From the NCBI RefSeq assembly GCF_000143415.4, contig NW_003314365.1:319679-383678 (forward strand): 64,000 nucleotides of DNA, in the 5' to 3' direction. Shown piece by piece: positions 12,001 to 34,505 of the stretch (the first letter of the stretch is position 1; every line of letters starts with the position of its first letter). Source of the stretch: Selaginella moellendorffii. Lineage: Eukaryota; Plantae; Lycopodiophyta. Below the pieces are notes generated by a model. The model was not told where the DNA came from, did no database searches, and saw only the letters and a program-made list of their open reading frames with translations. Position numbers and translations under genes: made by a program.

Positions 12001-15000
12001 TGGAGAAGCGTTTGAGCGCTGCTGAACGTCTTATCGTTGGCTTGGGCTCGGAGCACGAGAGATGGTCTCGAGAACTGGGCGACCTTGCTGTTGCTCGAGT
12101 CAAGCTGATTGGAGACTGCCTCGTCACCTCCAGCTTCCTGAGGTTGGCTAAACTATGACTATGCTACTACGGTTATGTTGACTTACTACTATCGTTTTCT
12201 CCCAGCTACTGCGGGGCATTTACAATGGACTACAGGACGGAGCTCATTCAAAATATCTGGCTCGCAGACATCCAATCCAAAGAGTTGCCCTGCACAGACC
12301 CTTTCTTCCTAGAGAACATTTTAACGAGTGAAGTTGAGATTAGCAAGTGGAACAGCGAGGGATTGCCATCGAATGAGCTCTCCATTCAGAACGGCATACT
12401 CACAACAAGGGCGTCCCGCTTTCCTCTTTGCATTGACCCGCAAATGCAGGTATAGTTCTGTGATAACTCCAACCCAACTCTTCTTTTGCTGAGCAGGCCA
12501 TATCCTGGATAAAAAAGAAGGAGGGCAAGCAGCTTGAGGGCCGGGTGAAAACCTTCAATGACTCTGACTTCGTGAAGCAGCTTGAGATGGCAATCCAGTA
12601 TGGGTTTCCATTTATGTTTGAAAATGTGGACGAGTATATAGACCCTGTCATAGATCCGGTTCTAGAAAGAACATTCACATCTGCTGGTGGTGCAAGGAAA
12701 AGTGTCAAGCTCGGGGATAAAGACGTCGAATGGGTGAGCATACAATCTTTCAGGACTGTATTTGTTTTTGACTGTTCAGCGGCAAACAGGACGACAACTT
12801 TAGGCTGTATTTAATAAGCAAGCTTCCGAATCCTCACTATGGCCCAGAAATATCCGGAAAGACTATGATCATCAACTATGGCGTCACTGAACAAGGGCTG
12901 CAGTCGCAGCTGCTAAATGCCACGGTAAGCTGGCCAGCTTTCTGAGTTTGACGCTCTTTTTTGCTTTTCAACAGGTAAGACATGAAAGGCCCGACCTTGA
13001 GGAACAAAGAGAAGAGCTTGTGAGGGACACTAGCGAGAACAAGGCGCTGTTGAAACAGCTCGAAGACACCCTTCTGCGGGTATGCCTGGTGTTCGTTCCT
13101 ACGTAAACCTGCAATGACTACGTTTCCACTCCGGTCTGTCAGGAACTAAGCAATGCCACGGGTAACATTCTGGATAACGAGGAACTGCTGACAACTTTGG
13201 AAAACACGAAGCTTAAAGCATCTGAGATTTCTCACAAGCTGAAGCTCGCCCGGGATACGTCCGTAGAGATCGATCAAGTAAGTTGTTGTGTCCATGAACC
13301 GTGTGAGTTTTTCTGGTTCGTGTGCAGCTGCGCCTGAGGTACTCCCCGGCTGCCAAGAGGGGTGCCATCCTCTTTTTTGTCATGTCCGGCCTCTCCGCTA
13401 TCAACAACATGTACGAGTACTCGCTGGCATCCTTTCTGCAAGTGTTTGAGATATCACTGGCCACGAGCAAGCGGGAACCCACACTAGACTCGCGGCTACG
13501 CAGCATCATCGACGCTGTCACATACGACGTGTACAATTATACGTGCACGGGGCTGTTTGAGAAGCACAAGTTGATGCTCTCCTTCCAGCTAACAACCAGG
13601 ATCATCGACGGGGAGACAGGAATGGATCATGCTCAGCTGCAGTTCTTCCTCAAGGGCAACCTGTCTCTGGAGAAATCGCCCCTGCCAAAGCCACACGACT
13701 GGTTTCCGGACACGGGGTGGCAAGATGTCGTGGAGATGATGGAACTGGGCCCGCAGTTCAAAGCTCTAGTAGACCACTTCTCGGAGAATGGACCGGAATG
13801 GAAGTCATGGTACGAGGAAGATCAGCCAGAGATGGCATCCATGCCAGGACAATTCAACGACAAGCTCAATTTTTTCGAGCAGCTCTGCGTCTTACGCTGC
13901 TTCCGCATCGACAGGATCACGGTCGCTGTCACGGTAAAATTGAATGCTAATTGTTTGCTGATCAATGTGTTTGATCACTTGTAAAACTGCAGCGGTACGT
14001 GATAGACCGGATGGGAGAGAAGTATGTCATGCCTCCGGTGCTCGACTACAAGAGCATACACCGCCAAAGCTCGGCATTGACGCCCATCGTCTTCATTCTT
14101 AGCCCTGGTGCTGACCCAGCTTTCGACGTTTTCAACCTGGGAGAGGAGATGGGGTTCAAGCCCGGTGCAAAGCTCAAGTATATGGCTCTGGGACAGGGAA
14201 TGGGACCAAAGGCTGCAGAGACACTCGAGTCGGGCTCCGGCCGTGGCCTGTGGGTCATGCTTCAAAATTGTCATCTGCTCCCGTCCTGGCTAAAGACGCT
14301 GGAAAAGATCCTTGAGAAGATAACCAAACCTCATCCCGAATTCAGGCTTTGGCTCACCACGGAGCCGACGTCAACTTTCCCTCTTGGCATCCTGCAGCGC
14401 AGCTTAAAAGTTGTCACGGAGCCCCCCAACGGGCTCAAGCTCAACTTGAGATCATCGTACGCCAAAATCACCGAAGAGATGCTTGCCGACTGCCCACACT
14501 TTGCTTTCCGTCCGCAGGTGGGTCTCTGCTCTCGGAGGCACTCACGCCACCTTGACTTCTGTATATGTGCAGGTGTTTGTGGTTGCCTTTTTCCATGCAG
14601 TGGTGCAAGAGCGGCGAAAGTACGGAAGGCTTGGATGGAATGTCCCTTACGACTTTAACGAGACCGACCTTCGCATCAGGTGAGCTCTTGCGCTAGCTCC
14701 GCGTGCTTAACCCCTCGCCTTCCCTCCTGCACAGCCTGTTGCTCATCTCCACGTACCTGCGGAAGGCTTTTGATAACAGGGATGACACCATACCATGGGG
14801 CACACTGCGCTACCTCATTGGTGAGGCCATGTATGGAGGGCGTGTCTCGGACTCGTTCGACCGGAGGATCTTGAAAACTTACCTGGATGAATACCTGGGG
14901 GACTTTTTGTTTGACAAGTTCCATCCCTTTTTTTTCTACACCAAAGACGATGGCTCTGGCTATATGCTTCCTCCTGCAGGGCCCAGAGAGAACTACACCA

Positions 15001-16221
15001 ATTACATTGACTCCCTACCAATAGTCCAGACGCCCGAGGTGTTTGGTCTCCACTCCAATGCCGATATTAGCTACTACACCAATACGACCAAGAACCTGTG
15101 GAAAGACCTTGTGGACTTGCAGCCTCGTGGAGGGGACAGTGGAGGCGGGGTGAGAAGAGAGGACATCATTGAGCGTGTGGCGTCAGATATACTGTCCAAG
15201 CTTCCTGTGCCTTTTGATCTTCCTGTGTTGAAGAAAAGATTTGGAGTCCCTACGCCCGTGCAAGTAAGTCACGCCTGCTATTGTTTGTCAACTTCTTGGA
15301 TGCCTGCCCCAGGTTGTGCTTCTCCAAGAGATTGAGAGATGGAACAGGCTTATTACCAGCATGGCAGAGAGCCTTCGAAAGCTCAAGAAAGCACTTGCTG
15401 GAGAGATTGGGATGAGCAAAGACTTAGACGAGCTCTCAACGGCTTTGTTTAATGGGCAGCTTCCAAACATGTGGCGCAGGCTAACCTCTCAGGTATAGAT
15501 CAGTTTTATGAAATCCGTATTATTGATGTGTTGGTTAATGTTAATGCATTGGAAATTAAATAAAAAATAAAACACAGACAGAGAAGATGCTTGCAGCTTG
15601 GATTGTGTGGTTGTTGCGGCGAGATCAACAATACAAAAATTGGGCCGAGCACGGGGAGCCGAAAGTTATGTGGCTGTCGGGCCTCCAGATTCCCGAAACA
15701 TATATTGCTGCACTTGTTCAAACTGCGTGCAGGGACCGCGGTTGGCCACTAGACAAGTCCACTATCTACACTAAGGTTTTTGTTTATACCGTTTCCTTGC
15801 TTGTCATTTAAAGATGCTCCACAGGTGACCAAGTTCAAAAGCATTGACGAAGTCCCGGAGAAGCCCAAGCATGGATGCTATGTCACTGGCCTCTATCTGG
15901 AAGGCGCCAATTGGGATCTGGAAAAGTCTGTTCTCAAGCGACAGGTACTAGTCAATGCCAGTGGAAGAGAAGCGTTAACGTTGCTTGTCTCCCCAGGATC
16001 CAAAGCAGCTCGTTGTCGAGCTGCCAATATTGGAAATCATTCCCATGGAGGCCAGCAAGATCAAGCTTCAAAACACGTTTAGAACGCCTGTTTACGTCAC
16101 ACAGGCACGCCGAAACGCTATGGGCGTGGGACTCATCTTTGAAGCGGACTTGGCTACTGAGGAACACACGTCACATTGGGTTCTGCAAGGAGTTGCTCTG
16201 TCCATGAACATCGACCACTGA
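1..16221 (+). CDS. DNAH10: Axonemal inner-arm dynein I1/f alpha heavy chain (DNAH10 / Chlamydomonas DHC1-PF9 type); multi-exon, 5' end lies before the window
   Basis: Spliced exons give [12 protein letters not shown] (tail), P-loops GPAGTGKT (~6333), GPTGGGKS (~7403), GESGTAKT (~8764), GVGGSGKK (~10081), [23 protein letters not shown], stalk/MTBD (~10900-12140), AAA5/6 and C-terminal [15 protein letters not shown] (stop 16219-16221). Dozens of short GT-AG introns, mostly ~45-60 nt. Confidence 0.95.
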
Positions 16222-16235
16222 TGGTGCCAAGGCCA

Positions 16236-17083
16236 TTAAGCCACACAACGTTTGGAGTGCGGTACGTATGCAGCTGTCTGCTGTTGGCTGGGTAGATCAA
16301 TCCACTGCTTTCGCTGTTGCAAAGTACCAGTCCAGGAAGGGTGAAGCTGAACTTAGGGTTTTACCTGAATTGGCAGGAAGAGCTTGTACTCGGGCGGCAG
16401 CATTTCCTCGGCATATATTCGGTCGCAGAAAAAGACCGAGCGGATTCTGCAGTTGGCAAACACCCTCACTCGGACGGTTTCCCTGTAGTTGGTACCGTAG
16501 GCAAGTCGGGTGCAGCCAGGAAGGTCGAAGTGCACCTGGTTCCACCCAACGTCCAAGGTGACAGGCATCAAGCACACGGACTGACCAACGCGAGTTGCTG
16601 TCTGCCAACAAAAGCCAACACATGTTTCGCATTCCAGCTCTGGGCATTTCTTACCCGGAAATTGGAGGCAATGAAGCGGCGGTGCTTGTTTTTGTCGTCA
16701 ATCACCTCGACTTCAAACATGAAGTAGCGCCTCATGTTCTTGACGATCATAACGAAAAAAGGGAGCCGGACGGCGAGAGAGTCAGAATTGTCCCGTGGAC
16801 AAGTGATGCCTGTCATCTGAACGTTCGCCCCCATAATCTCCACAACATAGGACTCAATGTCCTCGTCCCGGACGCTCTTAACGTCGCCATACGCACTTAT
16901 ACACCCCCACTCATTTCCCGTCAATCCATACACGAAGTGCTGCTCACCGTGCCTCTTCCACGACTGGAGAGGATTCTTCCCCCTGTAGTGGTGGCCAACC
17001 ACAGGTCAGCGCTCCACACAAGAAGCTCACCTTAGGCTGTACAAAATGGACAGGCATCCTGTCTGATAAGTATGTCTGAACAT
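16236..17083 (-). CDS. CFAP20: Divergent CFAP20/BUG22/FAP20-family protein
   Basis: ATG at 17083: MFRHTYQTGCLSILYSL; intron 17030-16983; ...EIMGANVQMTGITCP...LPFFVMIVKNMRRYFMFEVEVIDDKNKHRRFIASNFR; intron 16654-16602; TATRVGQSVCLMPVTLDVGWNQ...AYGTNYRETVRV...LPPEYKLFLPIQ. Ends either at 16353 (unspliced) or via a 51-nt intron 16364-16314 at TAA 16238-16236. Confidence 0.88.
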
Positions 17084-17429
17084 CCTTTTCTTTCCTCTGT
17101 TTTGCACCAAACTCTTGGTATCCCCTTGCCTAAAGCCCTAAAACTAATGACACTGGGAATCGAACCTTGGCTTTATGCGTCTGGCTTGACGTAAGCTTCA
17201 CATGTTTTTTCAAACAGTACTTTAAAAAATCTTCGATCACCACCACCATCACGTGCTTATGTCTATAATATTATTTGGACTTTTACACTAGGTAGTTTAA
17301 AAGTTAATGTCACATTTGCAAAAACCAAATGCAACCGGAAAGTGGCCCAGGATTGTGCGACAGCACTTGTAGGACGACCTTGAAGAGCGACAGCAACAGC
17401 ATTGTTGTCCCGTCGCTCGCTTCCTCTTC

Positions 17430-19100
17430 CATCCATAGCAGCAGATTTCAATGGCAAAGTTCTTCTATAAACACATTGCTTGTTGCTTTGGACTTCCAGC
17501 AATTTTGGTGTTTGACCATGGTGGTGCTTTCATTGGAAGGGCAGTTGAATCCCTGGTGGTGGAACCTGACATCCAGGACGTCTGGAGCAGCAGCAAATAT
17601 CCCCAGTTCAATGGCCAAGTTGAGTCTTTTAACAATAAATTTTAGTTACCACCAGCATTTTGTGGGCGTTCCAATCCATGTACAAGAGCCAACACCTTTC
17701 TGGCTTCTCTTAAGAGGTTGCTTTATGACACGCAGCAGACCAACTCAGCAAGGAGCAACAGATTAAGGCAAGAGCTTAGGAGACTTTGGCACTGGAAAAA
17801 GAGAGACAAGAAGCTGCTAATAAACCCCATATAGCACTGTCCAAACAGCACATGACAAGCAGGATTTGAACATGCGATTTTCATGTACCTTAAGGACCTT
17901 AATCCAGAAGACAAGTTCTCTTCCCACTCGTTTGACCCATTCATCATCCAGTAACAAGGGTGTGAACCTTTCTAAGACTTTAAGAATAATTTGTTGCATT
18001 TAGCATCAAACACTTTGAATAAAAATCTCTAAAATAAAGAAAGAAAACGAAAAGAAAATTAATTAAGCCTTGAAGTTTATTCCACTGGCCCTGGTGTTGA
18101 AAGGAGGGCACCCTAAACCATCTAGTCTCTCTACTGTAATCAAACTCCATGCTAAATAGCTCCAAATGCATCACTCAAGTCCCATTTTGCTCTGGGCTTG
18201 GGCTTGGGCTGGATATTTAAGGAATGTCTCACTTTGGAGGATCAAGCGACTGTGGTGCAAAGAGTACCCATGGACTGCTTGCAAGAAAAGGTGACACAGC
18301 CCCAAAAATAGCTGACGTGATTTGCTGGAGAGAGAAGAGACTAAAAGAAAGAAACATTAGAACACAGAGAAAAGAAAAGTAGTAGCAGTGTGACTTTCTT
18401 GTCCATTTTTATTGCTAAGTTTTGTTGGAAGAACATATTTGCTGAAGTCATGGCCTTGTGTCCTAAAAATGGTGTGAAATGAAGGTGAAAAAACTAATGA
18501 AGTAGTTGGGGTATCAACAGCAATGCCACCTGGAAACTACTAAACACTAAATGATAGGAAATGACAGTGTAAAAAATGATGATATGAAAAGAACCTTGAG
18601 AAACTCTAAACTGTTGTTTTTTGAATGATTCTGTTGTAAGCTTCAGGGAGAAACGAGATCAATGCAGCCTTGAGGCCAGAACCCAGGCTAAAGAAAAGAA
18701 AGATCACACTGCCGCATGCCCCACAGTATTGATGAGAAGGAAGCACAAGTATCATTTGATTCAACTTGAAACTATAAGCAGTCAAGTTGGAAAGACTCAT
18801 GCCACTTTAAAATTAAACCTAAACTATATCAAGTTGACGTCACTTCTCTCCAGTTCGTATGTGGATAAGGATTATACAACATCACACAATTGCTTTTGGC
18901 CCTGTGGTGAAGAAGTCCATCACAACGAATTGATGGTCCTCCAAGATGGTGGAGAAATCGAACCAACATAATCAAATCCCCGTTTGAAGAGTTGCTGAAA
19001 AGAAGGCATGGGATGTAGCTCTTTGCAAAAGAAAGCATTCCGTGTGTAGATTGCTGTGTCCCGATGTATGGCTGGCAAGATTTGTTTAGCTATCACCTGC
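17430..19100. pseudogene. Fragmented, partly inverted gypsy-like (rve) integrase remnant
   Basis: Minus ~19050-18880: LHPMPSFQQLFKRGFDYVGSISPPS / VVMDFFTTGPKAI. Plus 17451-17645: IACCFGLPAILVFDHGGAF...SSSKYPQFNGQVESFNN. Minus ~18000-17830: EWEENLSSGLRSLR...PACHVLFGQ. Confidence 0.6.
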
Positions 19101-19869
19101 ACTGAAAAGCGTCCTAAAAAGTGAAAAAAACGAATGTCATGTCTGCTATGGATCGGAAGAGAAGGCTGCTGAGGCCGTGTGTATAGAGGGCCCCTCCAAG
19201 CAAGCAAAAATCAGGAACCTTTTGTTGCTTCTCTCGCAATAAAGCTGGTGGATAGAGAGGTAAACCAAGCTGATATACATATTTGAGTTTGGGTAGAGAA
19301 ACCCAGGAGTAGGCAAAAGCGCAGATAAGATATAGGTTGTGGAAATTTTTCTGACTCTGCTTGAAGGAAGAAGAGTGGTAATTAATCAATACTAGCTCAT
19401 AGCTGAAGCCAATGTTCCTGCTCAATTGTATGCTGAATCCACCAGAAAAGAGTAGGATCGGTAAAGGCAGCCATGGTCTGGCTCTGGCTGCAACACGAAG
19501 GCTATAGCTGCAGCACTTAGGCGGCCATGGCAGCAGCTTTACGAAGGCTGCAGCTCTAGCGCTAAAGCGGCCAAGGTGGAATGGACTTTCCTTGTAAAAG
19601 AGGTACAAAAGTGTATACCTTATGTTCTCTCTTGTAGGTGCATGATAAAATAGAAATAGCAAGATGGAAGATCTATTGCTCAGGGAAAGAAAGGTTCCAT
19701 GGTGAAGTTTGAAGCTCAAGCAACAATGCAAGCATGCAAAAGAAACCTTAAACACACGAAAAGAACAAAATAATTCATAGCATACTTGAAACAACCCATC
19801 AAAAGCAGTTGATTGACAAGCCGAAAGGACCAAGCAACTTGGGCCACTCTGATTTCACACATTTTATAA

Positions 19870-21655
19870 ACCATTTGCACTTGTTTTTTTAGGTACTAAT
19901 CTATCTGGGAATCTTGAAGGAACTCTGTCCTTTAGCTTGCTAAGGGCTCTCCTTTTGCAAGCTTTCTAATTGCCATATAGTCTAATATAGATAATTCCAT
20001 ACTTTAGACTTTTGATAGCATCACGATTGTTAATAATAACATGTTCGAGCACCCATTTGATTCTCCATTCCCAATTTGCATAACCACCTTTGGTTATGTC
20101 TTTTGATTCCTATGGTTAGGCTCTATCTCTTTACTACTTACTTTTTGGCATTACGCCTTCTATTTAGTTATTCTCGTCCTATCTAAAAAGGTAGTTTTGC
20201 ACTTTCTACCATGCGTTAGCAAGTATTCTTAGGGATGAATTTACTCAATAACTTAAGGAGTGGTTTTTCAATTTGGATATGCTCACTGTGTAATCCCACA
20301 CACTGGGATTAATGTTGCTATGCATGGGCCTTTTTATGCCCATTGCTAGCGATGCCAAAATCCATTTTTGGCTTTATCCAATTTAAATAGATAAACTTTT
20401 CCTATCTCCGCAACCTTGGACGTTGGATAGCACCTCCTATCTATTATTCGCTAAGGACTTAGTCCCTTGGGCCTTATATAATGCCCTCATGATTCCAAAT
20501 ACCACTCTCTAATGTTTTAAAGTGTTTTGGTGTCTCAATAATGACCTTATTTGACAATGAGCATTTCCCTTTATGACATTGACTTATTATATCTTAACAT
20601 GAGTAATTTATTCCCCGGAGGGGTACATCTAACCTCCTTATCTGAATAAAAAGTCTTAGATAGTTAACTTTTACTAATCCAATCAATTATTTTGCATGGT
20701 TTGCTTAGTTTTCTCATAGTTATCAAGTCTTATAACTCATTGCTAGTGCTTCCACACCCTTATCATTATTTGGGTCACTACACTATAACCACATACCTTC
20801 CAATTTAGGCTATGCCATTCCTATTTCCATTCGAATTCCTTTGGTAAGGGGTTTTTTTTAAACCTATTAACTTGACCTCAAGGCATCACACTTTTGCATA
20901 TTTAGTGTCTCCACACTATTGGCTTTACAAATTTACCTTTATGACACTTCCCACTTGTGTTTAGATCTTTGCCAAGACCAAAGTAGTTATTTTGCATGCC
21001 AACTATTAGTTAGTACTACACCATAGTGTTCACATACAACTCTATGCCAAAGTTGTTTTTTTCCGGAAACACTTTTCCCATGACTTTAATATAACACATT
21101 CTGCCCTCAATGAGATACCCACTATTCTTATAGTTGGATCTTATGATCCTCCCTATCCTTTGTAGGGTACAACACACTCTAGTCCAAATGCTTCCACCAA
21201 TCCTTTAAGATCATTCCTTGACTCCACTCGAGTCATTTAGCTTTTTGAACTTTGCTAATTCGACGATCTATAAGGTCCTAGCCTCTTAGCTATTTTTGAG
21301 GTGCCAGTTCACTAAAATACATCTTCTTGTATTCCTATTCTACTCACAAAGACCATCTTTGCAAGTATTATTCCAACACTTAATTGTTTTTCATTTTCCA
21401 TGGGTTACCTTTGCCTCTTAAGACTATCCGTCCATATGATGAGAAATACCGACTCATCCTCTAAATACACCTTCCACTCCTTGGGTTTGTTCCAGCATTT
21501 ATAAAAAGTAACTCCGGCTACCATTTCAAAGACTTGTATCCTCTTCTGTATTTGACCTCCCACGGTTAATAATTTTGATTTTAAATTCATGAGCACCAGC
21601 CTCAACTATATGAGGATAATCTTGACTCCTTTATTGTTTTAGAGTCTCTATTTTT
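19870..21655 (-). mobile_element. Decayed non-coding internal region of LTR family A
   Basis: 19870-20640 is the reverse complement of ~30036-30820; ~20900-21655 is homologous to 37130-37880. No open reading frame. Confidence 0.7.
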
Positions 21656-24209: not shown

Positions 24210-25226
24210 TGATAGGCGCAAAATCTGCATATCCTAGAGCAACATCATCTCCCTTGACTTGGCACACTCTAGTGGCTTGGAAGTGGCTATTAACACAACT
24301 GTCCTTGTCGCGCATGTGACTTTGGGTATCGAAAGTTACCTGTCGACCAGTCCTTACGGACACTCTTACCTTACTGCCATGATGGCAAGAGGTCGGTATT
24401 GCTGGTCCCTTTATCAGTCCCTCTTGTGCTAGTGGAGTTAACTGGGCATTTAGAGTGTACTTAGACCGGACGAGCATAAGAATGGAATTCCTACGTGTTA
24501 TAAGCTAAGCATACTTAGCCCGGTAAGGAGTTCCAGTTTCGTTTTATCTTGCACTTGCTAGTGACAAGAACCCTCGCGTATTGAGATTAGTCCCTTAATA
24601 TCGCTACATGATAGCTTACCGTGTCTGCCAAACACCCTCACTATCATGCCCTTTGTGTTAGTCTCATTTTGGTCCCAAAAGCTATTTATGGAAAGTGTCC
24701 AGATTTGCTCGTTTGGCATATCTACGGAATGTAGAGATTGGCCTATACACAATGGTGTTCGTCCCGTGTCCAAATTCACAATCTAGGGACATTCCATATT
24801 TAATAAGTTTCGAGCTTATCCCAGAGACTAACTCCTGATACTAAGAGAGGCTTGGGGTGAAAGCCCAAACTGTGTTCCTCAAGGGGGGGGGGGGGGGGGG
24901 GGGCTGTGGGGGGTTCCAAATGTATAGTAGGGATAGTGGGTAGGTCGGGCATGGCCGACCAACCCGAGGCATAGTCTAGCTCCCGCTTGCGTGCCTGTCC
25001 TTGTTCTACATCCGGCTTGGGTCTAAGCCCAAGTTTCATTCCATGCTAACTGGTGGAGTACCTATATCCTCACGTTAGGCCACCGGTATGCCGAAATAGC
25101 ACCAGACTTTGTTTGGCTCCGTTTTGTGTGCTGGTCCTGGCATTGGGATGTTGGTTGCTCTAGGACTATTCCAAGTCACTCCGGGCTCCTGTCCCTTCAC
25201 TCCTTGGGCTGTACGCTCGGGAGTTG
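24210..25226 (+). mobile_element. LTR of family B, 3'-truncated
   Basis: Starts TG at 24210, interrupting the tandem repeat. Reverse-complement homologue of 44400-45104 and of 63790-64000. Contains a G21 run at 24883-24903. Confidence 0.8.
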
Positions 25227-27309
25227 TATGCATGGCGTGAGGCATAGGGCCCAGAATTTTCCTTACAGGATCTGAGACTGATTGAGGAACTTCCTGCAAA
25301 GGTTGTTTCTTATTTTTTCTTTTGATTTTTGTGACTAAATCTTTCTCTTATTGTAGGAGCTTTCCCACCAGCTTGCATTGTTCTACAAGCATGTTTTGAG
25401 AGACGATGGGAAGCCTTACCCTCCAGCAACTCTGAGGGATATGTTTTTTTGCTTTAACCGAGTATTGAAGCTGGCAAGAGAAGCCCGAGTTGCAAGAACA
25501 GGAGTTTTAGAAGAAGAAGTTGACATCCTGAATGATCCAAGGTTTCTTACAGCAAGGTATCTTGCTTTTTTTGTTCTTTTTGTTGTGGTTTGTGTTCTAA
25601 TATGTTTGGTTTGGTTTGTTTATTCTAGGAACACTGCTAGCCATGTAATTCAAAAAGCAGCACTAGAAACTACAAGGCCAACAAGTATAGGGTCAAAGCA
25701 TGTGTACTTGTCGATGGCTGAGCTTAAGGCAGTTCTCACGTTGCCAGAGTTTCTACCTCACAGTCCTAATGGACTGTTTCGGTTAGTTGTACTATTCTGC
25801 ATGAATTTCTTTCTTGTACGTGGGAGGAAGGAATTGTACGACTTGCGATTCACTGATTTTACACTTTTGGAGGATGTTGTTGGTTGCTATATCCAGTTGA
25901 GTAGTTTCTTATTTGTTTTCTTTGTTCTTGTCGGTTCTAATCAGAATTTTTTTTGTCTCAGATTCAACCAACGTGTTTCCAAAAACTACCAAGTGGATCT
26001 GATGAATTGTAAGAACATGGATCGGTGGCCTGTTGTGGATCTCTATGAAATAGATACTCCCTCAGTCTACAAGGCATTCAAGCTTTTTTTTGATAAGCAT
26101 CTAGCAGTTGGTGATGGGGAGGACTTGAACAAGCAGTCGTTTTTCCTAGCTTGTAATGATTGTTTGAACATGACTGATAATTGGTACTGTCGAGGGGCAC
26201 GGATAGGAGAGCATAAGATCTCTGAAGTAGTAAAATTGGTTGCCGCAAAAACAGGTAGTTAACTAACTGCTTTCTTGTTTGCTCATAGTTTTTTTTCTCC
26301 AGGTTTTAGCCTTTCAGCGAAAGATATTCGGCATTCAGCAATTACAACTATGAGTGTTTGCAACACTCCAATGGAAGACTGTATGGAGCTGATAGGACAC
26401 AAGAGGGTGGAAAACATGGAACAGTAAGGTTTTTGCTAACTATTTTGTCATTAATGCCTCTTTTTTTAACAAGTACGATCACTTTGGGAAAGCAAGGAGA
26501 ATGGCAATGTCATCTGTTCTGTATAACCGGTATGATCGTACTGGTCCTTTGAAAATTTACCAGGACGAATTTCGGAAAGCATCAGAGTATATTGTACGGT
26601 GCCATGAGGCTGGTAAACCTTTAAATGAAGATCCATTGGATCTTCAAGATTGCCATCTTGTTTCTTTTGGTAATTCAAAGCTTTTTTTTTTGTGGAGGTT
26701 TAACACTCTTCAATTCAGGTGGAAATGACAATTAACAGACTCAAAATCGTGAGCAGCAACAATAAAATTTTGGTAAGAAACTTTATAATCTTTATAATGG
26801 ACTTTTCTCTTTTCTCGATTTTAGGTGGTCCTGGGCAGCAACAGCCTTCTCCAAGAGAAGAGATCCACGAACAGGAACTGAATCACCACCAAGTTCTGGA
26901 CGTGATTGAAGAGCAGCAAGGTAAGAAAATTCTTTCTTTCCTTTTTTCTTTCAATTTAGTTTTCTCTTTATTTTAGGTGGACACGACAAGCAACACGAGA
27001 CTGTGCACGAGACTGTGCCAGAGCCTGTGCCAGAGCATGGCAAGTAGCAGGAATCCATTTCTGGAGACAAAGGTAAAGTTTATTTGATTTGAATTCTTTA
27101 TTTCTAACTTTTGATGTTATTTGGTAGATCTTGACAACAATGAGCTACTTTTAGCTCTTGCGAAAGATCCAAGAGCTGCAAAAGCTTTAGCACTACCGAC
27201 GATCACCAGCACATTTCACCACTGTTCTATGAGTAATTGTGTGATTGTAGTCAATGGTCATAGCCAAAGTGAGCTTGAATTATTCAAGCTTGCTTTGATT
27301 AAAAAATAA
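25221..27309 (+). pseudogene. Intron-containing tyrosine recombinase, Crypton/DUF3504 type (5'-truncated, pseudogenised)
   Basis: Spliced product: AWREA*..IEELPAKELSHQLALFYKHVLRDDGKPYPPATL..FLTAR..LVRGRKELYDL..SKNYQ..FFL..NWY..IGEHKI..AKDIRHSAIT..LIGHKRVENMEQYDH..MSSVL..TFHHCSMSNCVIVVN. Introns 25302-25356, 25557-25628, 25896-25961, 26255-26302, 26424-26472 (acceptor AG>AA), plus four more in the tail. Confidence 0.85.
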
Positions 27310-27334
27310 AAAAGCAATTGCATCTCGTCTGATT

Positions 27335-27557
27335 GGAGAATGTGGTTACTGGCAGCTAAGTTCTCTAGAACCTGGATGACAGCAGCCATGTTCTCTAGAA
27401 CCTGGTGGCTGGCAGGTGGGTTCTCTAGAACCTGGTAGCTGTCAGCCACATTCTCTAGAATGTGGCTGACAACAGTAAAATTTTCACAGAGAACCTGACT
27501 TGATCCGATGGCTGCCAACAGCTGGATCAAGTTAACGGGCGAGCCACAGCCCATTAA
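27335..27557. repeat. Putative Crypton 3' terminus: four 30-bp-period repeats, a 14-bp palindrome and a 9-8-9 inverted site
   Basis: TTCTCTAGAA at 27361, 27391, 27421 and 27451. GTCAGCCACATTCT-CT-AGAATGTGGCTGAC at 27441-27470. TTAACGGGC-GAGCCACA-GCCCATTAA at 27532-27557. Confidence 0.7.
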
Positions 27558-30035
27558 GGTTAGGGAAGTAGTTCCCGAGTGTTCAAAGAAAGGGCTTTGA
27601 ACGAAAGTCGATGGTCAAGGACTTTCACGCTTATGCAGGAACCATGTTACCGTGGTCGGAGGACTTGCCAAGCGAGATTGGCAAGTCGGGGGGAACAAAT
27701 ACCCTAGTTGAAGGTGATAACTTCAAAAAAGGTGGGCCATGGGGCCAAGCATGGAGGAGTCCATGCATGATCACAGACTTGTCAAGTGAGAGGTGTGGAG
27801 GAACTAGGTTCCTAAGCTGTGATCTGTAGCATGCTTTAAGTATAAGTTGGTGCACTGGCGTGATGAGTCACACCAGGCATCCTGGGTGATGCTGTCCGTA
27901 GATGCATATACGGAGGTTGGGTTCGAGTCCCAACCCTCTAGTGCTTGGGTTCGAGTCCCAAATCACTAGGGTGTGGTGATGGTTTGGAATATGAGGACAC
28001 TCATATTTTGGTGGTCATGGACTCTCAATGAGGAGATTGGCTTCGGCATATCGCCAAGTGGGGGATGCCTCGGAGTTGTGATGCACGTTAGATTGCTTAG
28101 AGTGAAAGCTCAGCATATCTAACTTGAACACTTTGGTGCAAAGGGCACCAAGGACGTGGTGAATGAGATGGGGACACCCAGTCTCAGTTGCTATGGATCC
28201 TTGGCTGGAAGGGTTGGTTTGGGCGCATCGCCAAGTGTGGGGGATGCCCCCGGGGTCATAGTCAACAATTTAAGAAGGTTTGCAAGACCTAGTTCATATT
28301 GGTAGACCTGTTAAGGGGTCAAGATGAGATCACTAGGTGATCTTGTGGCTAAAACAAGGACAAGGTTTTTATTTGGGTTAAGGAATACGATTCCTAGTTC
28401 AAAATGTTGATTTGAACTATTGATAATGGTGTGGCTTGGTCAAGGTGACCAAGTGGGAAGAACACTTAAGGGAAATGAGCTATGTCAATGTAATGGCATA
28501 GTAAGTATGAGGAAAGTAATCTTTATAAGAGATCCATGGGAGGGTCTTAAAGTTGGGCTGTGGATAGAGCCCACAGTAGAAAATGTTAAAGAAACGTACT
28601 AGGGGTGAACACCCTTTGGACTTGGCAAAACAAAGTGTTTGTTATGGAACCGAAAAGATACCTCGAGAATGGAGGTAGCAATCCTATGTTGCTAGGTGCA
28701 ACAATCAAGGATAGGAGCAAAAGACTAGTAGCCAAGTATGGGCCATGAAGATCATTGGAGGGAAACCAAATGGCAAAGTTAAGCATGGAACACTAAGGTG
28801 TTAGATGCTAACGGATGGTGAGAAGGGAAGTATGCTTCCAAGGATGGATTCCCAAATGCTCAAAGGGTGAAAGCTCCAAGGAGGAAGTGGCAAAGTAGCC
28901 AAATGATAGGGCCATAGATAGCCCTAGCACAAAGTATGATAACTAGAACTTAGTGCCTAAGGTGGCATGAAATATAAGAGGTACAGAACTGTGCCCTCAA
29001 GTAAAGAACTTCCTAAGGTGGGTAAGTGAAGTTGCACAATATGTGCAATGAAAGGTGTCAGAGACACTTAGGAAATTGACTCTGACAAGTCAAAACTTAA
29101 AAGTTCCAAAGTGCAAAGGTTATGTCAATGGAATCTAAAACTACTCGAGGATGAGTAGTGGAATTGAGTTAGAGAAAGTATCTCTAATAGGTTTAGCGAG
29201 AACTAAACCAATAAAAGGGAGAAAACCACCCTAGGTGGCTGAATGAGTCTCTATGTTGGAGGGACTATGCTCCTTAGAGGACTGACAAGGCATGGTGAGC
29301 CTTCGGTGTCAAACCATAGACAAAAACTGGTTGGGTGCCAAGGATGGAAAGGGTAATACATATTGGTGTTACTTTATAAAAATGGTTTACCGTTCGATGA
29401 GGACATCGAACTTTGTCTATGGGTGGTGTGTGAGACACAAAATCCCTAGGCCCCAAAGTGGAGCCGGAAGGGTGCCATGTGGTAGTGGCTGAAGCGAAAG
29501 CCAAACGAGCGTAACACGTTTGGACTAAAAGCTCCGACTTGGAATGTTGAGAGCGGGAGAGGAACTCCCAACAAAGTGCTTGAGGAACAAGCATGAAGCG
29601 AGCAATAAGCGAGGCTCCAAAAAGGGACCCAAAAAGGACCAACACATGACACGTGGAAGTGTCCGAGATGGAGTCCGAGGCGGACCCTAGTTGGAGTCCG
29701 AGATGGACCCGAAGTGGAGTCCGAGATGGAGTCCGATATGGAGTCCGAGATGGACCCGAAGTGGAGTCCGAGGTGGACCGAAACGGAGTCCGAGATGGAC
29801 CTGAGATGGAGTCCGAGATGGAGTCCGAGATGGACCCGAGATGGAGTCCGAGATGGAGTCCGAGATAGAGTCCGAGATGGACCGAGACGGAGTCCGAGAT
29901 GGAGTCCGAGATGGAGTCTGAGAAGGACCCGAGATGGAGTCCGAGGTCGGGACCAAGACCGGGACCAAGACCGAGACCGAGACCGAGACCGGGACCGAGA
30001 CCGAGACTGGGACCGGGACTGAGACCGAGACCGAG
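27556..30035 (+). mobile_element. LTR family A fragment 1: non-coding internal region, PPT and partial LTR
   Basis: Colinear with 30895-33395. LTR start TGTGAGACAC at 29429 follows GGGTGGTG. Satellite tract at 29660-30035. Confidence 0.8.
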
Positions 30036-33000
30036 GCATAAGGAAGTTGGATATACCCTTACGGGGGATAAGTTGCTTGTGTTGCGATATAGTAAGTCAA
30101 TGTCATAAAAGGAAATACTCATTGTCAAGAAAGCCATCATTGGGACACCCAGACACTCTAGAACACCAGAAGGTGGTGTTTGATGTCGCGAGGGCAATGG
30201 ATAAAGCCCAAGGGACTAAGTCCCTAGCAAATGATGGATAGAAGGTGCTATCCAAATGTCCAAGGTGGCGGAGACAGGAGAAGACTGTCTACTCGAATTG
30301 GACAAAGCCAAAAATGGAATTTTGGCAAGGCTAGTGATGGGCATGTAAAGGCCCATAAGCAACAATGTAATCCCAGTGTGTGGGATTATAAGGTGAGCAT
30401 ACCCGGATTGAGGAACCACTCCCTGGGCTATTGGGTAGGTTCATCCCTAAGAATACTTGCTAAAGCATGATAGAAAGTGCAACGCTATCCTCCTGGTCTG
30501 GAGGAGAATGACCAAAGGAAAGGTGTGAAGCCAAAAAGCAAGAAGTAAGGGGATAGAACCGAACCATAGGATTCAAAGGGCATAACCAAGGTTGGTTATG
30601 CCAGCTGGGAGTGGAGAATCAAGTGGGGGCTCGAGAGTGTTGCCGCTAACAACCGTGATGCCATGGAGAGTCTAAAATATGGAATTGTCCATGTTAGACT
30701 ATGTGGCATTTTGAAGGCTTGCAAAAAGGGAGGCCTTAGCAAGCTGAGGGACAGAGTTCCTTCAAGGTTCCCAAAGACGATTCTAGGTAGCTTAGTACCT
30801 AGAAAGGCCAAGTGTAAATGGTTCATGGAATGCGCGAAATCAAAGTGGCGCAGCAGAAGCGTGGTCTTGGAGCTTGCCATGAGGCAAGGCTATCAAGGTT
30901 AGGGAAGTAGTTCCCGAGTGTTCAAAGAGAGGGCTTTGAACGAAAGTCGATGGTCAAGGACTTCCACGCTTATGCAGGAACCATGTTACAATGGTCGGAG
31001 GACTTGCCAAGCGAGATTGGCACGTCGGGGGAACAAATACCCTAGTTGAAGGTGATAACTTCAAAAAGGGTGGGCCATGGGGCCGAGCATGGAGGAGTCC
31101 ATGCATGATCACAGACATGTCAAGTGAGAGGACTTGGCAGTGTGGAGGAACTAGGTTCCTAAGCTGTGATCTGTAGCGCACTTTAAAAATAAGTTGGTGC
31201 ACCGGCGTGGGGAGTCACGCCAGGCATCCTGGGTGATGCCGTCCGTAGATGCATATACGGAGGTTGGGTTCGAGTCCCGACCCTCTAGTGCTTGGGTTCG
31301 AGTCCCAAATCACTAGGGCGTGGTGATGGTTTGGAATATGAGGACACTCATATTTCGGTGGTCATGGACTCTCAGTGAGGGGACTGGTTTGGGCACACCG
31401 CCAAGCGAGGGATGCCTCGGAGTCGTGATGCACGGTTAGATTGCTTAGAGTGAAAGTTCGGCATATCTAACTTGAACACTTTGGTGCAAAGGGCACCAAG
31501 GACGTGGTGATGAGATGGGGACACCCAAGTCTCAGTTGCTATGGATCCTTGGCCGGAAGGGCTGGCTTGGGCGCACCGCCAAGTGTGGGGGATGCCCCCG
31601 GGGTCATAGTCAACAACTTAGAAGGGTCTGGAAGACCTAATCCCTATTGATAAACCTATTAAGGGGTCAAGATAAGATCACTAGGTGATCTTGTGGCTAA
31701 ACAAGGACAAAGTCTTTGTTTGGGTTAAGGAATATGATTCCTAGTTCAAAGTGTTAATTTGAACCATTGATAAAGGTGTGGCTTGGTTGAGGTGACCAAG
31801 TGGGAAGCACACCTAAGGGAAATGAGCTATGTCAATGCTATGGCATAGTAAGTCCAAGGAAAGTAGTCTCTATAAAAGATCCAAGGGAGGGTCTCAAAAA
31901 GTTGGGCCGTGGATAGAGCCCACGACAGAAAATGTTAAAGAGATGTACTAGGGGTGAACACCTTTTGGACTTGGCAAAGCAAAGTGTTTGCTATGGAACC
32001 GAAAGGAAACCTCAAAAATGGAGGTAGCGATCCTATGTTGCTTGGTGCAACAATCCAAGGATAGGAGCAAAAGACGAGTGCCCAAGATAGGGCTGTGGAA
32101 TCCATTGGAAAGAATCCAAGTGGCAAAGTTAGCCAAGGAACACTAATGTGTTTGATGCTAACGAATTGCGGAAAAAGAGGTGGGCTTCCAAGGATGGATT
32201 CCCAAGTGCTCCAATTTGGCAAAGGAAAGGCTCCAAGTGAGGGAGCAACTAAGTAGCCAAAAGATAGGGCCGTGGACAGCCCTAGCACAAATAATGATAA
32301 ATGGAACGTAATGCCAATGGTGGCACAAAAATAGAAAAGAGGATGAGGGTGCCCTCGAGTAGAGAACTTCCTAGGAGGGGAAGTGGAGTTGCACAAAATG
32401 TGCAAGGCAAGGTGTCGGAGACACCTAGGAAATTGACTTCAAGAAGTCAAAAGTAAACGTTCCAAAGTGCAAAGGTAGATCAATGGAATCTGTGACTACT
32501 CAAGAATGAGTAGTGGAATTGAGTTAGAGAGGGTGCCTCTAACGGGTTTAGCGAGAACTAAACCAATAAACGGAAAGAACCACCCCAAGTGGTCCAATCA
32601 GTTTCTAAGTTAGAGAGACTATCCTCCTTAGAGGATGGACAAGGCATGGTGAGCCTTTGGGGTCAAACCATAGACAAATATTGGCCGGGTGCTAAGGATG
32701 GGAATGGTAATACCTGCGGGCGTTACTTTATAAAAGGGTTTACCGTTTGATGAGGACATCGAACTTCGTCTATGGGTGGTGGAGTTGTGAGACACAAAAT
32801 CCCTAGGCCCCAAAGTGGAGCCGGAAGGGTGCCATGTGGTAGTGGCTGAAGCGAAAGCCAAACGAGCGTAACACGTTTGGACTAAAAGCTCCGACTTGGA
32901 ATGTTGAGAGCGGGAGTGGAACTCCCAATAAAGTGCTCGAGGAACAAGCATGAAGCGAGCAATAAGCGAGGCTCCAAAAAGGGACCCAAAAAGGACCAAC

Positions 33001-34505
33001 ACATGACACGTGGAAGTGTCCGAGATGGAGTCCGAGGCGGACCCTAGTTGGAGTCCGAGATGGACCCGAAGTGGAGTCCGAGATGGAGTCCGATATGGAG
33101 TCCGAGATGGACCCGAAGTGGAGTCCGAGGTGGACCGAGATGGAGTCCGAGATGGACCTGAGATGGAGTCCGAGATGGACCCGAGATGGAGTCCGAGATG
33201 GAGTCCGAGATAGAGTCCGAGGTGGACCGAGACGGAGTCCGAGATGGACCCGAGATGGAGTCCGAGATGGACCGAGACGGAGTCCGAGATGGAGTCCGAG
33301 ATGGAGTCCGAGATGGAGTCCGAGGTCGGGACCAAGACCGGGACCAAGACCGAGACCGAGACCGAGACCGGGACCGGGACCGAGACCGAGACCGAGGCCA
33401 AGGCGGAGACCGAGCCCGAGCCCGAGTCCGAGTCCGAGTCCGAGTCCGAGTCCGAGTCCGAGTCCGAGTCCGAGTCCGAGTCCGAGTCCGAGTCCGAGTT
33501 CGAGTCTGAGAGGGTGAAAGCCCAAAGCGTTCGTCTCCCAGACCCTGGGGGGTTTGGTGAGCTCCAAAAGTATAGTAAGGGGGAGGACTGCAGTGGAGCC
33601 AGTTTGGCCAGGAAAGGCCAGTTTGGCCCAGGAAGGCCAGACCCAGTGTTGGGTGATGAGCTGCCCACTGGGAAGTCCAAGACTAGAGTGAACCCAGACC
33701 GACAAGCGGGGTAGCTTGGTAAAGTGTTCAAGAGCCGGCTCTAGTTCCCCCGGGAGATCGACTGGCCGATGCTCCCAGTCCAAGTGTGGGTGGCACTACC
33801 TACTTGGATACCTGGTGTGGCTCAATGGAACCCGCTCTAAGCCCATGGCTAGAGCACCCAAGGGCAGAAGGCGAGGAGAGTACCTAGGTGGCTCGTGTAA
33901 GGCCACGGTGTTCTGAAATGTTGTCCCAAAGGCCCAGACTATGGAAAGGAAGAGGAGCAGTCCTCTGGGGTAGTGACCAAGGACACAGTCGTGTGGTGAG
34001 GAAGTCCCAGAGGACCGTGGGACTTAGTGGTCGGGCCTGTGGGTCTCGATCCAGTGGCAGTGTTGGCAAACACGGCCAGGGGCAGAAAGGGACTTAGTGG
34101 GGACTGACAGAGGGATATTGGGGAAGGCTATTCCCCTTGTCGGTGGGCATCCTAAGGATGCTAAGGAGTGGATCTGAGATGACCACTCACGGATGGTTTG
34201 CCTAGTCTTGGAGGGCCAAGACGGTGATGCAAGTGGTGTTGGACCACCAGTGTGACCAAGGTAAATGGGCATGGCCTTAGCGTAACGGGCCGGTACGTCG
34301 GTGATACCTTGGGTTGTCGATCATGGGATCGGACACGTGGAGCACTTGGACCAAGTGCTAAGGGTGAGTGGCATGGATGCCATTCTCGGGGCTAGCAAGC
34401 CCCAAGTCCTGAGTTGGACTTATGGAGGTTGTCAATGAGACCCCTCCAAGTGGTCAGAGGTGTGGTTAAGTGACTAAAGTAAAATGGAAAATTAAGTCGC
34501 TTACA
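30036..34505 (+). mobile_element. LTR family A fragment 2: non-coding internal region, PPT and complete ~1.72-kb 3' LTR (32786-34505)
   Basis: PPT GGGTGGTGGAGT precedes TGTGAGACAC (32786); the LTR ends GTCGCTTACA (34505). This end matches the minus-strand LTR end at 38202, which is followed by a PBS. Confidence 0.85.
33015..33510. repeat. LTR-borne GGAGTCCGAGAT / GAGACC / GAGTCC satellite
   Basis: 12-mer array grading into a near-perfect (GAGTCC)n run at ~33423-33497. Related arrays at 29660-30035, 34745-35420 and 36370-37000. Confidence 0.95.

What the first reader, a model, noticed from the sequence alone, without database searches (positions are those of the whole stretch)
25221..27557. 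Crypton-type (DUF3504) intron-containing tyrosine-recombinase transposon in an apparent land-plant genome
Seen: splicing short T-rich introns rebuilds a tyrosine recombinase with R (CGT 25819), K (SKNYQ), KxxR (26320-26331), GH (26395-26400) and Y (26474-26476). It also has the Crypton-like N-terminal 'EL..L..F...V...DG..Y.P.TL' block and a C-terminal 'F.HC..NC.I' motif. No RT is nearby. Established: spliced YR-only elements are Cryptons, described from fungi, animals and stramenopiles; DUF3504 is the CryptonA/ZMYM/KCTD1-related type. To my knowledge they are not a standard part of land-plant TE inventories. Inference: an overlooked plant Crypton lineage, either ancient or horizontally acquired (e.g. 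from fungi). Its intron size matches host genes and it is joined to plant-type LTR sequence on both sides, which argues against contamination.
Basis: partly seen in the sequence, partly recalled or inferred. Interest (0 to 1): 0.9.

Follow-up and report, generated by a model that had tools for sequence, protein, structure and literature searches.

The report
Dead plant Crypton-like transposon copy
This stretch of the spikemoss Selaginella moellendorffii genome is a broken, front-truncated copy of a 3.27-kb jumping gene that moves with a tyrosine recombinase, a kind of transposon that published land-plant inventories do not list but which also occurs in ferns, mosses and liverworts.

Summary
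Window 25222-27558 (+) carries a ten-exon tyrosine-recombinase (YR) gene with R, K, KxxR, GH and Y at the stated coordinates. A fully spliced RNA contig of a sibling copy confirms all nine 48-72-nt introns.

This copy is dead. It lacks the first 929 bp of a 3266-bp element. It has four C>T nonsense codons. A G>A change destroys the splice acceptor before the catalytic-Tyr exon.

The window is S. moellendorffii GL377669.1. Four full tandem copies lie on GL377575.1. The 3' end ...CCCGTTAAG abuts at least four different flanks, so it is a real terminus. The unit holds no RT, and the introns persist in genomic copies, so the element is DNA-mediated and Crypton-like.

Relatives form host-specific clades in Adiantum, Ceratodon and Calypogeia. 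In Adiantum they are discrete 2.8-kb elements, 98.8% identical on two chromosomes. One intron is shared with Adiantum in position and phase.

The closest known kin by fold and language-model features are CryptonA/DUF3504 proteins, but Pfam scores stay below both gathering cut-offs. A hairpin-forming ~120-170-bp palindrome spans the head-to-tail junction and is not a described Crypton feature.

The scan had already found this family on other DNA (tetramer s1-385019, solo copy s1-410721). I found no paper that describes it.

The parts
24488..25226 (.). Left flank: a dispersed repeat, cut off at the junction. Its siblings continue with unrelated sequence. A 4-5-bp microhomology (AGTT/AGTTG) overlaps the element at 25222-25226.
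   Evidence: Matches 45103-44409 (82%) and 64000-63791 (90%) on the minus strand. High contig depth in run X18.
25222..27558 (+). 5'-truncated, inactivated copy (the 3' 2337 bp) of a 3266-bp YR-only element.
   Evidence: 94.9-95.6% identical to four full tandem copies in L001, and homology stops exactly at these limits. The missing 929 bp is absent from the window.
25222..25301 (+). Remnant of the exon that encodes the conserved N..W-A...F-AW block (here ...LYAWREA*GPEFSLQDLRLIEELPAK). Premature TAG at 25245.
   Evidence: The intron 25302-25356 is spliced in RNA.
25357..25556 (+). Exon for the core-binding-type N-terminal domain (ELSHQLALFYKHVLRDDGKPYPPATL...).
25629..25895 (+). Exon with catalytic Arg I (CGT 25819-25821, VRGRKELY).
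25896..25961 (+). Intron 3 (66 nt, phase 2, before the F of FNQRVSKNY). Its position and phase are shared with the Adiantum element.
   Evidence: Spliced in RNA.
25962..26254 (+). Exon with the catalytic Lys (SKNYQ).
26303..26423 (+). Exon with KxxR (26320-26331) and GH (26395-26400).
   Evidence: Weak Phage_integrase match at model positions 127-161.
26424..26473 (+). Intron 5 with a destroyed acceptor. Siblings read AACAG|G (49-nt intron). The window has A at 26472, and the next AG gives a +1 frameshift just before the catalytic Tyr.
   Evidence: (the joint skips 49).
26474..26669 (+). Exon that starts with the catalytic Tyr (TAC 26474-26476) and contains the conserved YD.TG.LK.Y block.
26719..27072 (+). 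Three low-complexity C-terminal exons (26719-26772, 26825-26920, 26977-27072) with premature stops at 26733, 26763 and 27045.
27128..27309 (+). Last exon with the conserved C-terminal block (...TSTFHHCSMSNCVIVVNG...) and the natural stop at 27307.
27334..27487 (+). Five units of a 30-bp periodic, alternately inverted repeat around GTTCTC(T/C)AGAAC. These are candidate accessory protein-binding sites.
27531..27558 (+). 3' terminal 28-mer. It holds the 9-8-9 site TTAACGGGC-GAGCCACA-GCCC(G>A)TTAA and forms the outer left arm of the junction palindrome. The element ends at ...TTAAG.
   Evidence: At least four different flanks follow 27558.
27553..30035 (.). Right flank: a 2.5-kb repeat, cut off at the junction. 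Its sibling at 30892 and five X18 contigs carry ...GGCAAGGCTATCAAG upstream. A 6-bp overlap, (G/A)T(T/C)AAG, is shared with the element end.

Best explanation
Window 25222-27558 is a dead, 5'-truncated copy of a 3.27-kb autonomous DNA transposon of S. moellendorffii. The element's only gene is a multi-exon tyrosine recombinase, so it is Crypton-like. Shown: the family is multi-copy with a sharp 3' terminus. It keeps its spliceosomal introns in every genomic copy, so it is copied as DNA and not through RNA. It carries no RT. At least one sibling copy is transcribed and fully spliced. Inferred mechanism: the recombinase excises the element as a circle. The circle junction rebuilds a ~166-bp hairpin-forming palindrome made of the last 28 bp and the first 138 bp. 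The recombinase then integrates the circle by strand exchange at short sequence matches: ..TTAAG at this copy's right junction with ATCAAG in the target, and head-to-tail arrays when the target is another copy. After integration into the 2.5-kb repeat on the right, a deletion with AGTT microhomology removed the element's first 929 bp and the target's left part. C>T/G>A decay, typical of methylated repeats, then added four nonsense codons and destroyed one splice acceptor.
For: Spliced gene and motifs. All introns confirmed by a spliced 2047-nt contig and by RNA-seq joints. Four tandem 3266-bp units in L001 start at AAGGAG and end at GTTAAG. Right end followed by different flanks in the window, at the L001 array end, in X1 and in X24. 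Window-specific changes are 44 of 80 C>T/G>A, including all four stops and the acceptor. Junction palindrome dG -65.8 kcal/mol, z -10.2. Same architecture in the Adiantum element, where two 2825-bp copies are 98.8% identical on different chromosomes with unrelated flanks and the palindrome has z -10.9. YR fold: Cre is the top hit at E 1e-5 and QRICH1 ranks 8. DUF3504 clusters are nearest by shape and by features. The only RT in L001 belongs to a nested Ty3/Gypsy element with its own LTRs and DDE integrase.
Against: No excision, circle or empty site was observed here. The terminal direct repeat is at most 3 bp (AAG), shorter than the 4-6 bp described for Cryptons. The element boundary lies at the outer edge of the 9-8-9 site, not in its spacer, so the actual crossover site is unknown. 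The tandem array could come from unequal crossing-over and not from recombinase action. I could not read the whole expressed sibling, so whether it encodes an intact recombinase is unproven. Only the Trp codon that is TAG in all four L001 copies was seen as TGG. Pfam scores are below the gathering cut-offs.
Confidence: 0.85

Rival explanations
1. The sequence is a host or domesticated recombinase-derived gene family that was duplicated segmentally, not a mobile element.
For: Homologues are annotated as ordinary hypothetical genes in Selaginella, Adiantum, Ceratodon and Calypogeia. The gene has a host-like multi-exon structure and is expressed. No palindrome was found next to the Calypogeia gene in L007. 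Earlier scan notes report domesticated Crypton-derived fusions in this genome.
Against: The Selaginella unit has discrete ends next to at least four unrelated flanks. It occurs as truncated and nonsense-riddled copies. The Adiantum unit is a 2825-bp block, 98.8% identical on two chromosomes, with unrelated flanks. A. capillus-veneris has a dozen gene models of the family and A. nelumboides nine.
Confidence: 0.05
2. The sequence is the remnant of a DIRS/Ngaro-type YR retrotransposon that lost its RT. The junction palindrome would then be a relic of the inverted terminal repeat and internal complementary region of DIRS elements.
For: DIRS elements also encode a YR and have termini that are complementary to an internal region (as summarised in PMC13465315). 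An RT ORF lies inside L001 copy 1.
Against: That RT belongs to a nested Ty3/Gypsy chromovirus with its own 96%-identical LTRs, gag, protease and DDE integrase. Complete 3266-bp and 2825-bp units hold only the YR gene. Nine or more introns are retained in all five genomic copies, which RNA-mediated copying would remove.
Confidence: 0.04
3. The sequence is a contaminant or the result of a very recent horizontal transfer from a fungus (for example Glomeromycota Glomhoppers) or from an animal.
For: DUF3504 CryptonA elements are abundant in arbuscular-mycorrhizal fungi that colonise these plants (PMC13465315). The nearest Atlas clusters are from animals.
Against: The sequence is embedded in two S. 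moellendorffii scaffolds, next to a dynein heavy-chain gene and plant repeats. It is transcribed in Selaginella RNA runs. A full HMMER scan of 1.8 billion representatives found only 18 relatives, and every named one is a non-seed plant. The clades are host-specific and deeply separated, and one intron is shared with a fern.
Confidence: 0.03

Closest known systems
CryptonA elements and DUF3504 (PF12012) proteins: animal Cryptons, Glomhoppers of Glomeromycota, and the domesticated ZMYM2/3/4, QRICH1 and KCTD1 genes
   Same: The element carries a YR-only single gene. The protein has a two-domain Cre-like fold with an N-terminal core-binding-type domain. These are the nearest neighbours by language-model features (0.98) and by shape: the top five Atlas rows are all DUF3504 clusters, and QRICH1 chain 9hjt_H ranks 8 in the PDB search. 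There are consistent full-length but weak PF12012 alignments.
   Different: Pfam PF12012 is never reached (best 25.3 bits against 29.7). The hosts are land plants, whereas the literature calls DUF3504 'widespread in Opisthokonta' (PMC13465315). The active site has KxxR in place of HxxR in all plant members. The family has a conserved C-terminal F..NC.(I/V) block and a junction-spanning palindrome. Its phylogenetic position was not tested.
Fungal and stramenopile Cryptons (CryptonF and CryptonS; Goodwin 2003; Kojima and Jurka 2011, PMC3212892)
   Same: They are DNA elements that encode only a YR. They contain introns, which is the classic argument for DNA-mediated transposition. They lack classical TIRs and LTRs, and the junctions show short sequence matches with the target.
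   Different: There is no GCR1_C domain and no C48 peptidase. Described Cryptons have 4-6-bp terminal direct repeats, whereas here only AAG (3 bp) repeats. A large subterminal palindrome is present. Sequence similarity is undetectable by HMMER.
DIRS1-like YR retrotransposons
   Same: They encode a YR, and their termini are complementary to an internal or adjacent region, so that a circular form has a special junction.
   Different: Here there is no RT, RNase H or methyltransferase, and introns are retained in the genomic copies.
Cre/loxP and, as a mechanistic analogy only, YRs that act on folded hairpin sites (integron IntI/attC, XerCD on CTX phage; recalled from memory, not tested)
   Same: The top structural match is Cre. 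The terminal site has 9-bp inverted arms around an 8-bp spacer. The head-to-tail junction can fold into a long imperfect hairpin.
   Different: The element boundary lies outside the 9-8-9 site and not in its spacer. There is no evidence for single-stranded substrates.

Membership tests
Tyrosine recombinase superfamily | Catalytic residues R, K, H/KxxR, H/W and Y in the canonical order and spacing | tested here: met
   R 25819, K in SKNYQ, KxxR 26320-26331, GH 26395-26400 and Y 26474 (H+9). The residues align with all plant homologues. The first His is Lys in the whole plant family. In this copy the Tyr exon is out of frame.
Tyrosine recombinase superfamily | Cre/XerD-like two-domain fold | tested here: met
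   The model of homologue P0008 has good confidence for residues 60-345 and low confidence in the segment holding KxxR, GH and Y. Cre chains are the top hits at E about 1e-5 over about 350 columns. The model is of a homologue, not of the window protein.
Tyrosine recombinase superfamily | Pfam Phage_integrase (PF00589) at or above the gathering score | tested here: not met
   A single Selaginella copy scores 24.0 bits against 27.1 (E 3.7e-5), and other members score 18-22 bits. The 42.6 bits for P0001 come from several copies fused in one gene model.
Crypton (YR-only DNA transposon) | YR is the only enzyme; no RT/RNase H inside the unit | tested here: met
   The 3266-bp unit in L001 and the 2825-bp unit in L005 and L006 hold only the YR gene. 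The RT in L001 is a nested Gypsy element.
Crypton (YR-only DNA transposon) | Several copies with the same ends in different genomic contexts | tested here: met
   The right end is followed by four or more different flanks. The Adiantum copies lie on two chromosomes. The left end was seen only once, at the array start.
Crypton (YR-only DNA transposon) | Introns retained in genomic copies (DNA-mediated spread) | tested here: met
   All five Selaginella copies keep the nine introns that RNA removes.
Crypton (YR-only DNA transposon) | No TIRs; 4-6-bp direct repeats at both termini | tested here: inconclusive
   Only AAG repeats at both Selaginella ends. TTATG is a possible repeat in one Adiantum copy. 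A 28-bp 3' terminal sequence is inverted 110 bp inside the 5' end. No empty site was available.
Crypton (YR-only DNA transposon) | Excision as a circle and YR-mediated integration | not testable with these tools
   This needs eccDNA or long-read junction data, or biochemistry.
CryptonA / DUF3504 (PF12012) | PF12012 at or above the gathering score | tested here: not met
   The window ORF scores 13.1 bits (E 0.099). The best family member, P0031, scores 25.3 bits against 29.7 (E 1.8e-5). Four of 15 members match at E<=1.
CryptonA / DUF3504 (PF12012) | Nearest structural and feature neighbours are DUF3504 proteins | tested here: met
CryptonA / DUF3504 (PF12012) | Phylogenetic placement inside CryptonA relative to CryptonF/I/S/V and DIRS YRs | not tested
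DIRS/Ngaro YR retrotransposons | RT/RNase H encoded with the YR | tested here: not met

The most novel reading that the evidence does not exclude
An ancient embryophyte-wide superfamily of Crypton-like YR DNA transposons is present in liverworts, mosses, lycophytes and ferns and has so far not been seen in seed plants. It is still active in Selaginella, where a spliced sibling transcript exists, and in Adiantum, where copies are 98.8% identical. Its recombination substrate is the long hairpin-forming palindrome that is recreated only at the circle or head-to-tail junction. That would be a site architecture not described for any eukaryotic YR element.
Probability: 0.3. Interest if true: 0.8.

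Novelty: new variant of a known kind. Interest (0 to 1): 0.6.

Why it matters
Published land-plant TE inventories contain no tyrosine-recombinase elements. A 2022 review states that DIRS elements are known only from green algae, and it never mentions Cryptons (PMC9033089). The 2026 Glomhopper paper describes DUF3504 as an opisthokont family (PMC13465315).

A YR-only transposon lineage shared by bryophytes, a lycophyte and ferns would add a superfamily to plant TE classification. It would also explain gene models that are really TE copies or chimeras, such as SELMODRAFT_409570 and SELMODRAFT_428622, and the Adiantum fusions with PPR and fucosyltransferase genes.

It offers a source for the recombinase-derived host genes noted elsewhere in this genome. 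It also offers a eukaryotic site-specific recombinase with a defined candidate site that already works in plant nuclei.

This particular copy is only a fossil of that family.

Tried and rejected
1. Pfam scans on exon-sized pieces of the window gave only noise-level hits, so the family had to be approached through homologues.

2. The two word-index protein searches with profiles A1 and A2 reached only plant relatives. They found no intact Selaginella protein and no outgroup.

3. A profile search of PDB sequences gave nothing meaningful. Only fold comparison worked.

4. I first split the L001 period into a 929-bp 'spacer' and a 2337-bp 'unit', and wondered why the window copy starts exactly at that boundary. 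That boundary is simply the window copy's truncation point. It lies inside a coding exon and is not a natural terminus.

5. A search of the window for the missing 929 bp, for further copies, and for the terminal 28-mer found none.

6. No palindrome was found next to the Calypogeia gene, so that homologue may not be a mobile copy.

7. An ALOG relationship of the N-terminal domain got no Pfam support.

8. I could not establish that the flanks are LTRs. The long ORFs in them have no Pfam match.

Full report
**Provenance**

A 7.6-kb locus fetched through gene model SELMODRAFT_428622 (P0002) is identical to the window. This places the window at GL377669.1:319679-383678 of Selaginella moellendorffii GCA_000143415.2. 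A dynein heavy-chain gene lies at 9.4-15.3 kb.

**Checking the observation**

Reading 24800-28000 and translating it gives ten exons separated by GT-AG introns of 48-72 nt.
- R at 25819-25821
- K in SKNYQ
- KxxR at 26320-26331
- GH at 26395-26400
- Y at 26474-26476, nine residues after His, the spacing seen in Cre and XerD

The introns are not just plausible. When public runs were laid on 25000-27800, a 2047-nt contig of run X1 (contig depth about 160) skipped all nine introns. Raw RNA-seq reads of X23 and X24 showed the first two joints. All of those reads had the first mate on the minus strand, which fits a plus-strand RNA in a standard stranded library.

**This copy is dead**

I aligned it with four sibling copies. 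The defects are:
- Siblings have the acceptor AACAG|G before the Tyr exon. The window has A at 26472, so the next AG shifts the frame by +1 right before the catalytic Tyr.
- CAG or CAA became TAG or TAA at 25245, 26733, 26763 and 27045.
- Of 80 window-specific substitutions, 44 are C>T or G>A.
- The copy also lacks its 5' end (next section).

**The full element**

P0001 (SELMODRAFT_409570) is a chimeric 1401-aa gene model. Its locus L001 (GL377575.1) holds four head-to-tail copies with a period of 3266 bp, spanning 2615-21243. The first copy is interrupted by a 5.56-kb insertion.

That insertion is a Ty3/Gypsy chromovirus with its own 96%-identical LTRs, gag, protease, RT/RNase H and DDE integrase. 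The only RT nearby is therefore not part of the YR element.

Each unit starts AAGGAGTTCC and ends CCCGTTAAG. The window matches only the last 2337 bp. The break falls inside the exon that encodes the conserved N-x-W-A...F-x-A-W block, so it is a truncation and not a terminus.

The missing 929 bp carry a GC-rich palindrome, a probable promoter and 5' UTR, and the start codon (MDPPSFDLG...). All four L001 copies have TAG in place of the conserved Trp. The 5' overhang of the X1 transcript reads TGG there, so another, better-preserved copy is the one expressed.

**Ends and junctions**

The right end at 27558 is followed by different sequence in five contexts: the window, the L001 array end, an X1 contig, X24 reads, and the next unit in tandem. 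It is therefore a real terminus.

In the window it abuts a 2.5-kb repeat (27553-30035, 88% identical to 30892-33414). The sibling of that repeat, and five X18 contigs, continue upstream with ...GGCAAGGCTATCAAG. Element and target thus overlap in (G/A)T(T/C)AAG.

The left junction joins the truncated element to a truncated dispersed repeat through AGTT(G). The simplest history is integration into the right-hand repeat, followed by a microhomology-mediated deletion that removed the element's 5' end.

**Terminal architecture**

- The last 28 bp contain TTAACGGGC-N8-GCCCGTTAA. In the window this is at 27532-27557, with a G>A change in the right arm.
- An inverted copy of the 28-mer lies 110 bp inside the 5' end.
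- Across a head-to-tail or circle junction these sequences form a 166-nt imperfect palindrome. Folded as single-stranded DNA it gives -65.8 kcal/mol, z = -10.2.
- Upstream lie five 30-bp units of alternately inverted repeats around GTTCTCYAGAAC (window about 27334-27487).

**Relatives**

A full HMMER scan of 1.84 billion representatives with the 294-aa read-through ORF found only 18 hits at E<=0.001. Every hit that carries a name is from a non-seed plant: Adiantum capillus-veneris, Ceratodon purpureus or Calypogeia fissa. A profile search added A. nelumboides and more Adiantum copies.

The proteins share the whole architecture, including the C-terminal F..NC.(I/V) block.

In Adiantum, L005 7742-10566 and L006 7718-10541 are 98.8% identical over 2825 bp. 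They lie on different chromosomes and have unrelated flanks. Each has a 118-nt 5' palindrome (z = -10.9) and a 3' end complementary to the sequence just after that palindrome. This is the same design as in Selaginella. A second Adiantum family (L004) also has the palindrome.

Intron 3 of the Selaginella gene (phase 2, before F-x-x-R-x-SKNY) coincides in position and phase with an Adiantum intron. The other introns are lineage-specific.

A maximum-likelihood tree gives separate, well-supported clades for Selaginella, Ceratodon, Calypogeia plus unnamed sequences, and Adiantum. The inter-clade branches are long. This fits long residence in each lineage. Without outgroups it does not date the origin.

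**Family assignment**

- The AlphaFold model of homologue P0008 is confident for residues 60-345. It matches Cre best (E about 1e-5, about 350 columns), and QRICH1 ranks 8.
- The five nearest ESM-Atlas shapes are all DUF3504 clusters. Language-model features point to the same clusters at 0.98.
- Pfam is significant by E-value but below the curated cut-offs for both models. Phage_integrase scores 24.0 bits against 27.1 for one Selaginella copy. DUF3504 scores at best 25.3 bits against 29.7.

So it works like a Crypton and is closest to CryptonA/DUF3504. Formal membership of PF12012 is not met, and its phylogenetic position is untested.

**Literature**

- Kojima and Jurka 2011 list Cryptons from fungi, animals and stramenopiles, with 4-6-bp terminal direct repeats and no TIRs.
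- The 2026 Glomhopper paper calls DUF3504 widespread in Opisthokonta.
- A 2022 review of land-plant TEs has no Crypton entry and says DIRS elements are known only from green algae.
- Searches that paired Crypton with Selaginella, Physcomitrella, fern or land plants found no description.
- Repbase and Dfam could not be consulted.

**Earlier scan notes**

After I had found the L001 array, the scan's index showed that the same family had been reported on other DNA. The notes cover the tetramer (s1-385019), a 3267-bp solo copy said to have empty sites (s1-410721) and the terminal site in this window (s1-380636).

**Verdict**

This window holds a fossil copy. The interest lies in the family: a new plant lineage of Crypton-like elements with an unusual junction palindrome.

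Noticed in passing
window 9398-15335 (+): ORFs with dynein heavy-chain domains (AAA lid, D6 P-loop, C-terminal domain). This is an axonemal-type dynein gene, as expected in a plant with flagellate sperm.
   Followed up: partly
window 27553-30035 and 30892-33414: Two 2.5-kb direct repeats (88% identical) lie 857 bp apart, with many internal short repeats. The 857-bp spacer matches 19840-20641 in inverse orientation. The type of element was not determined, and its ORFs have no Pfam match.
   Followed up: partly
window 24886-24909: A run of about 24 G inside the left-flank repeat.
   Followed up: no
L001:4287-9846 (-): A complete Ty3/Gypsy chromovirus is nested in the first copy of the tandem array. 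It has LTRs of about 300-390 bp at 96% identity, plus gag, protease, RT/RNase H, integrase and a chromodomain.
   Followed up: yes
L006:14731-16222 (+): A gene with a Replitron_HUH domain lies about 4 kb downstream of the Adiantum YR element.
   Followed up: no
P0010, P0028, P0034, P0043 (Adiantum gene models): The YR element is fused in annotation with PPR, O-fucosyltransferase or retrotransposon-gag domains. These are probably chimeric gene calls across TE insertions.
   Followed up: no
window 27487-27528, RNA reads of run X24: Fifteen to sixteen RNA reads match only about 30 nt of the subterminal region. They continue with other sequence that still contains GTTAACGGGTGAGC. This suggests a transcribed related or non-autonomous family with a similar terminal motif.
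   Followed up: no
run X18 contig ending at window 27269: The contig continues into GGGGATCCTCTAGAGT, a cloning-vector polylinker. X18-X20 are therefore probably clone-derived data, not whole-genome reads.
   Followed up: no
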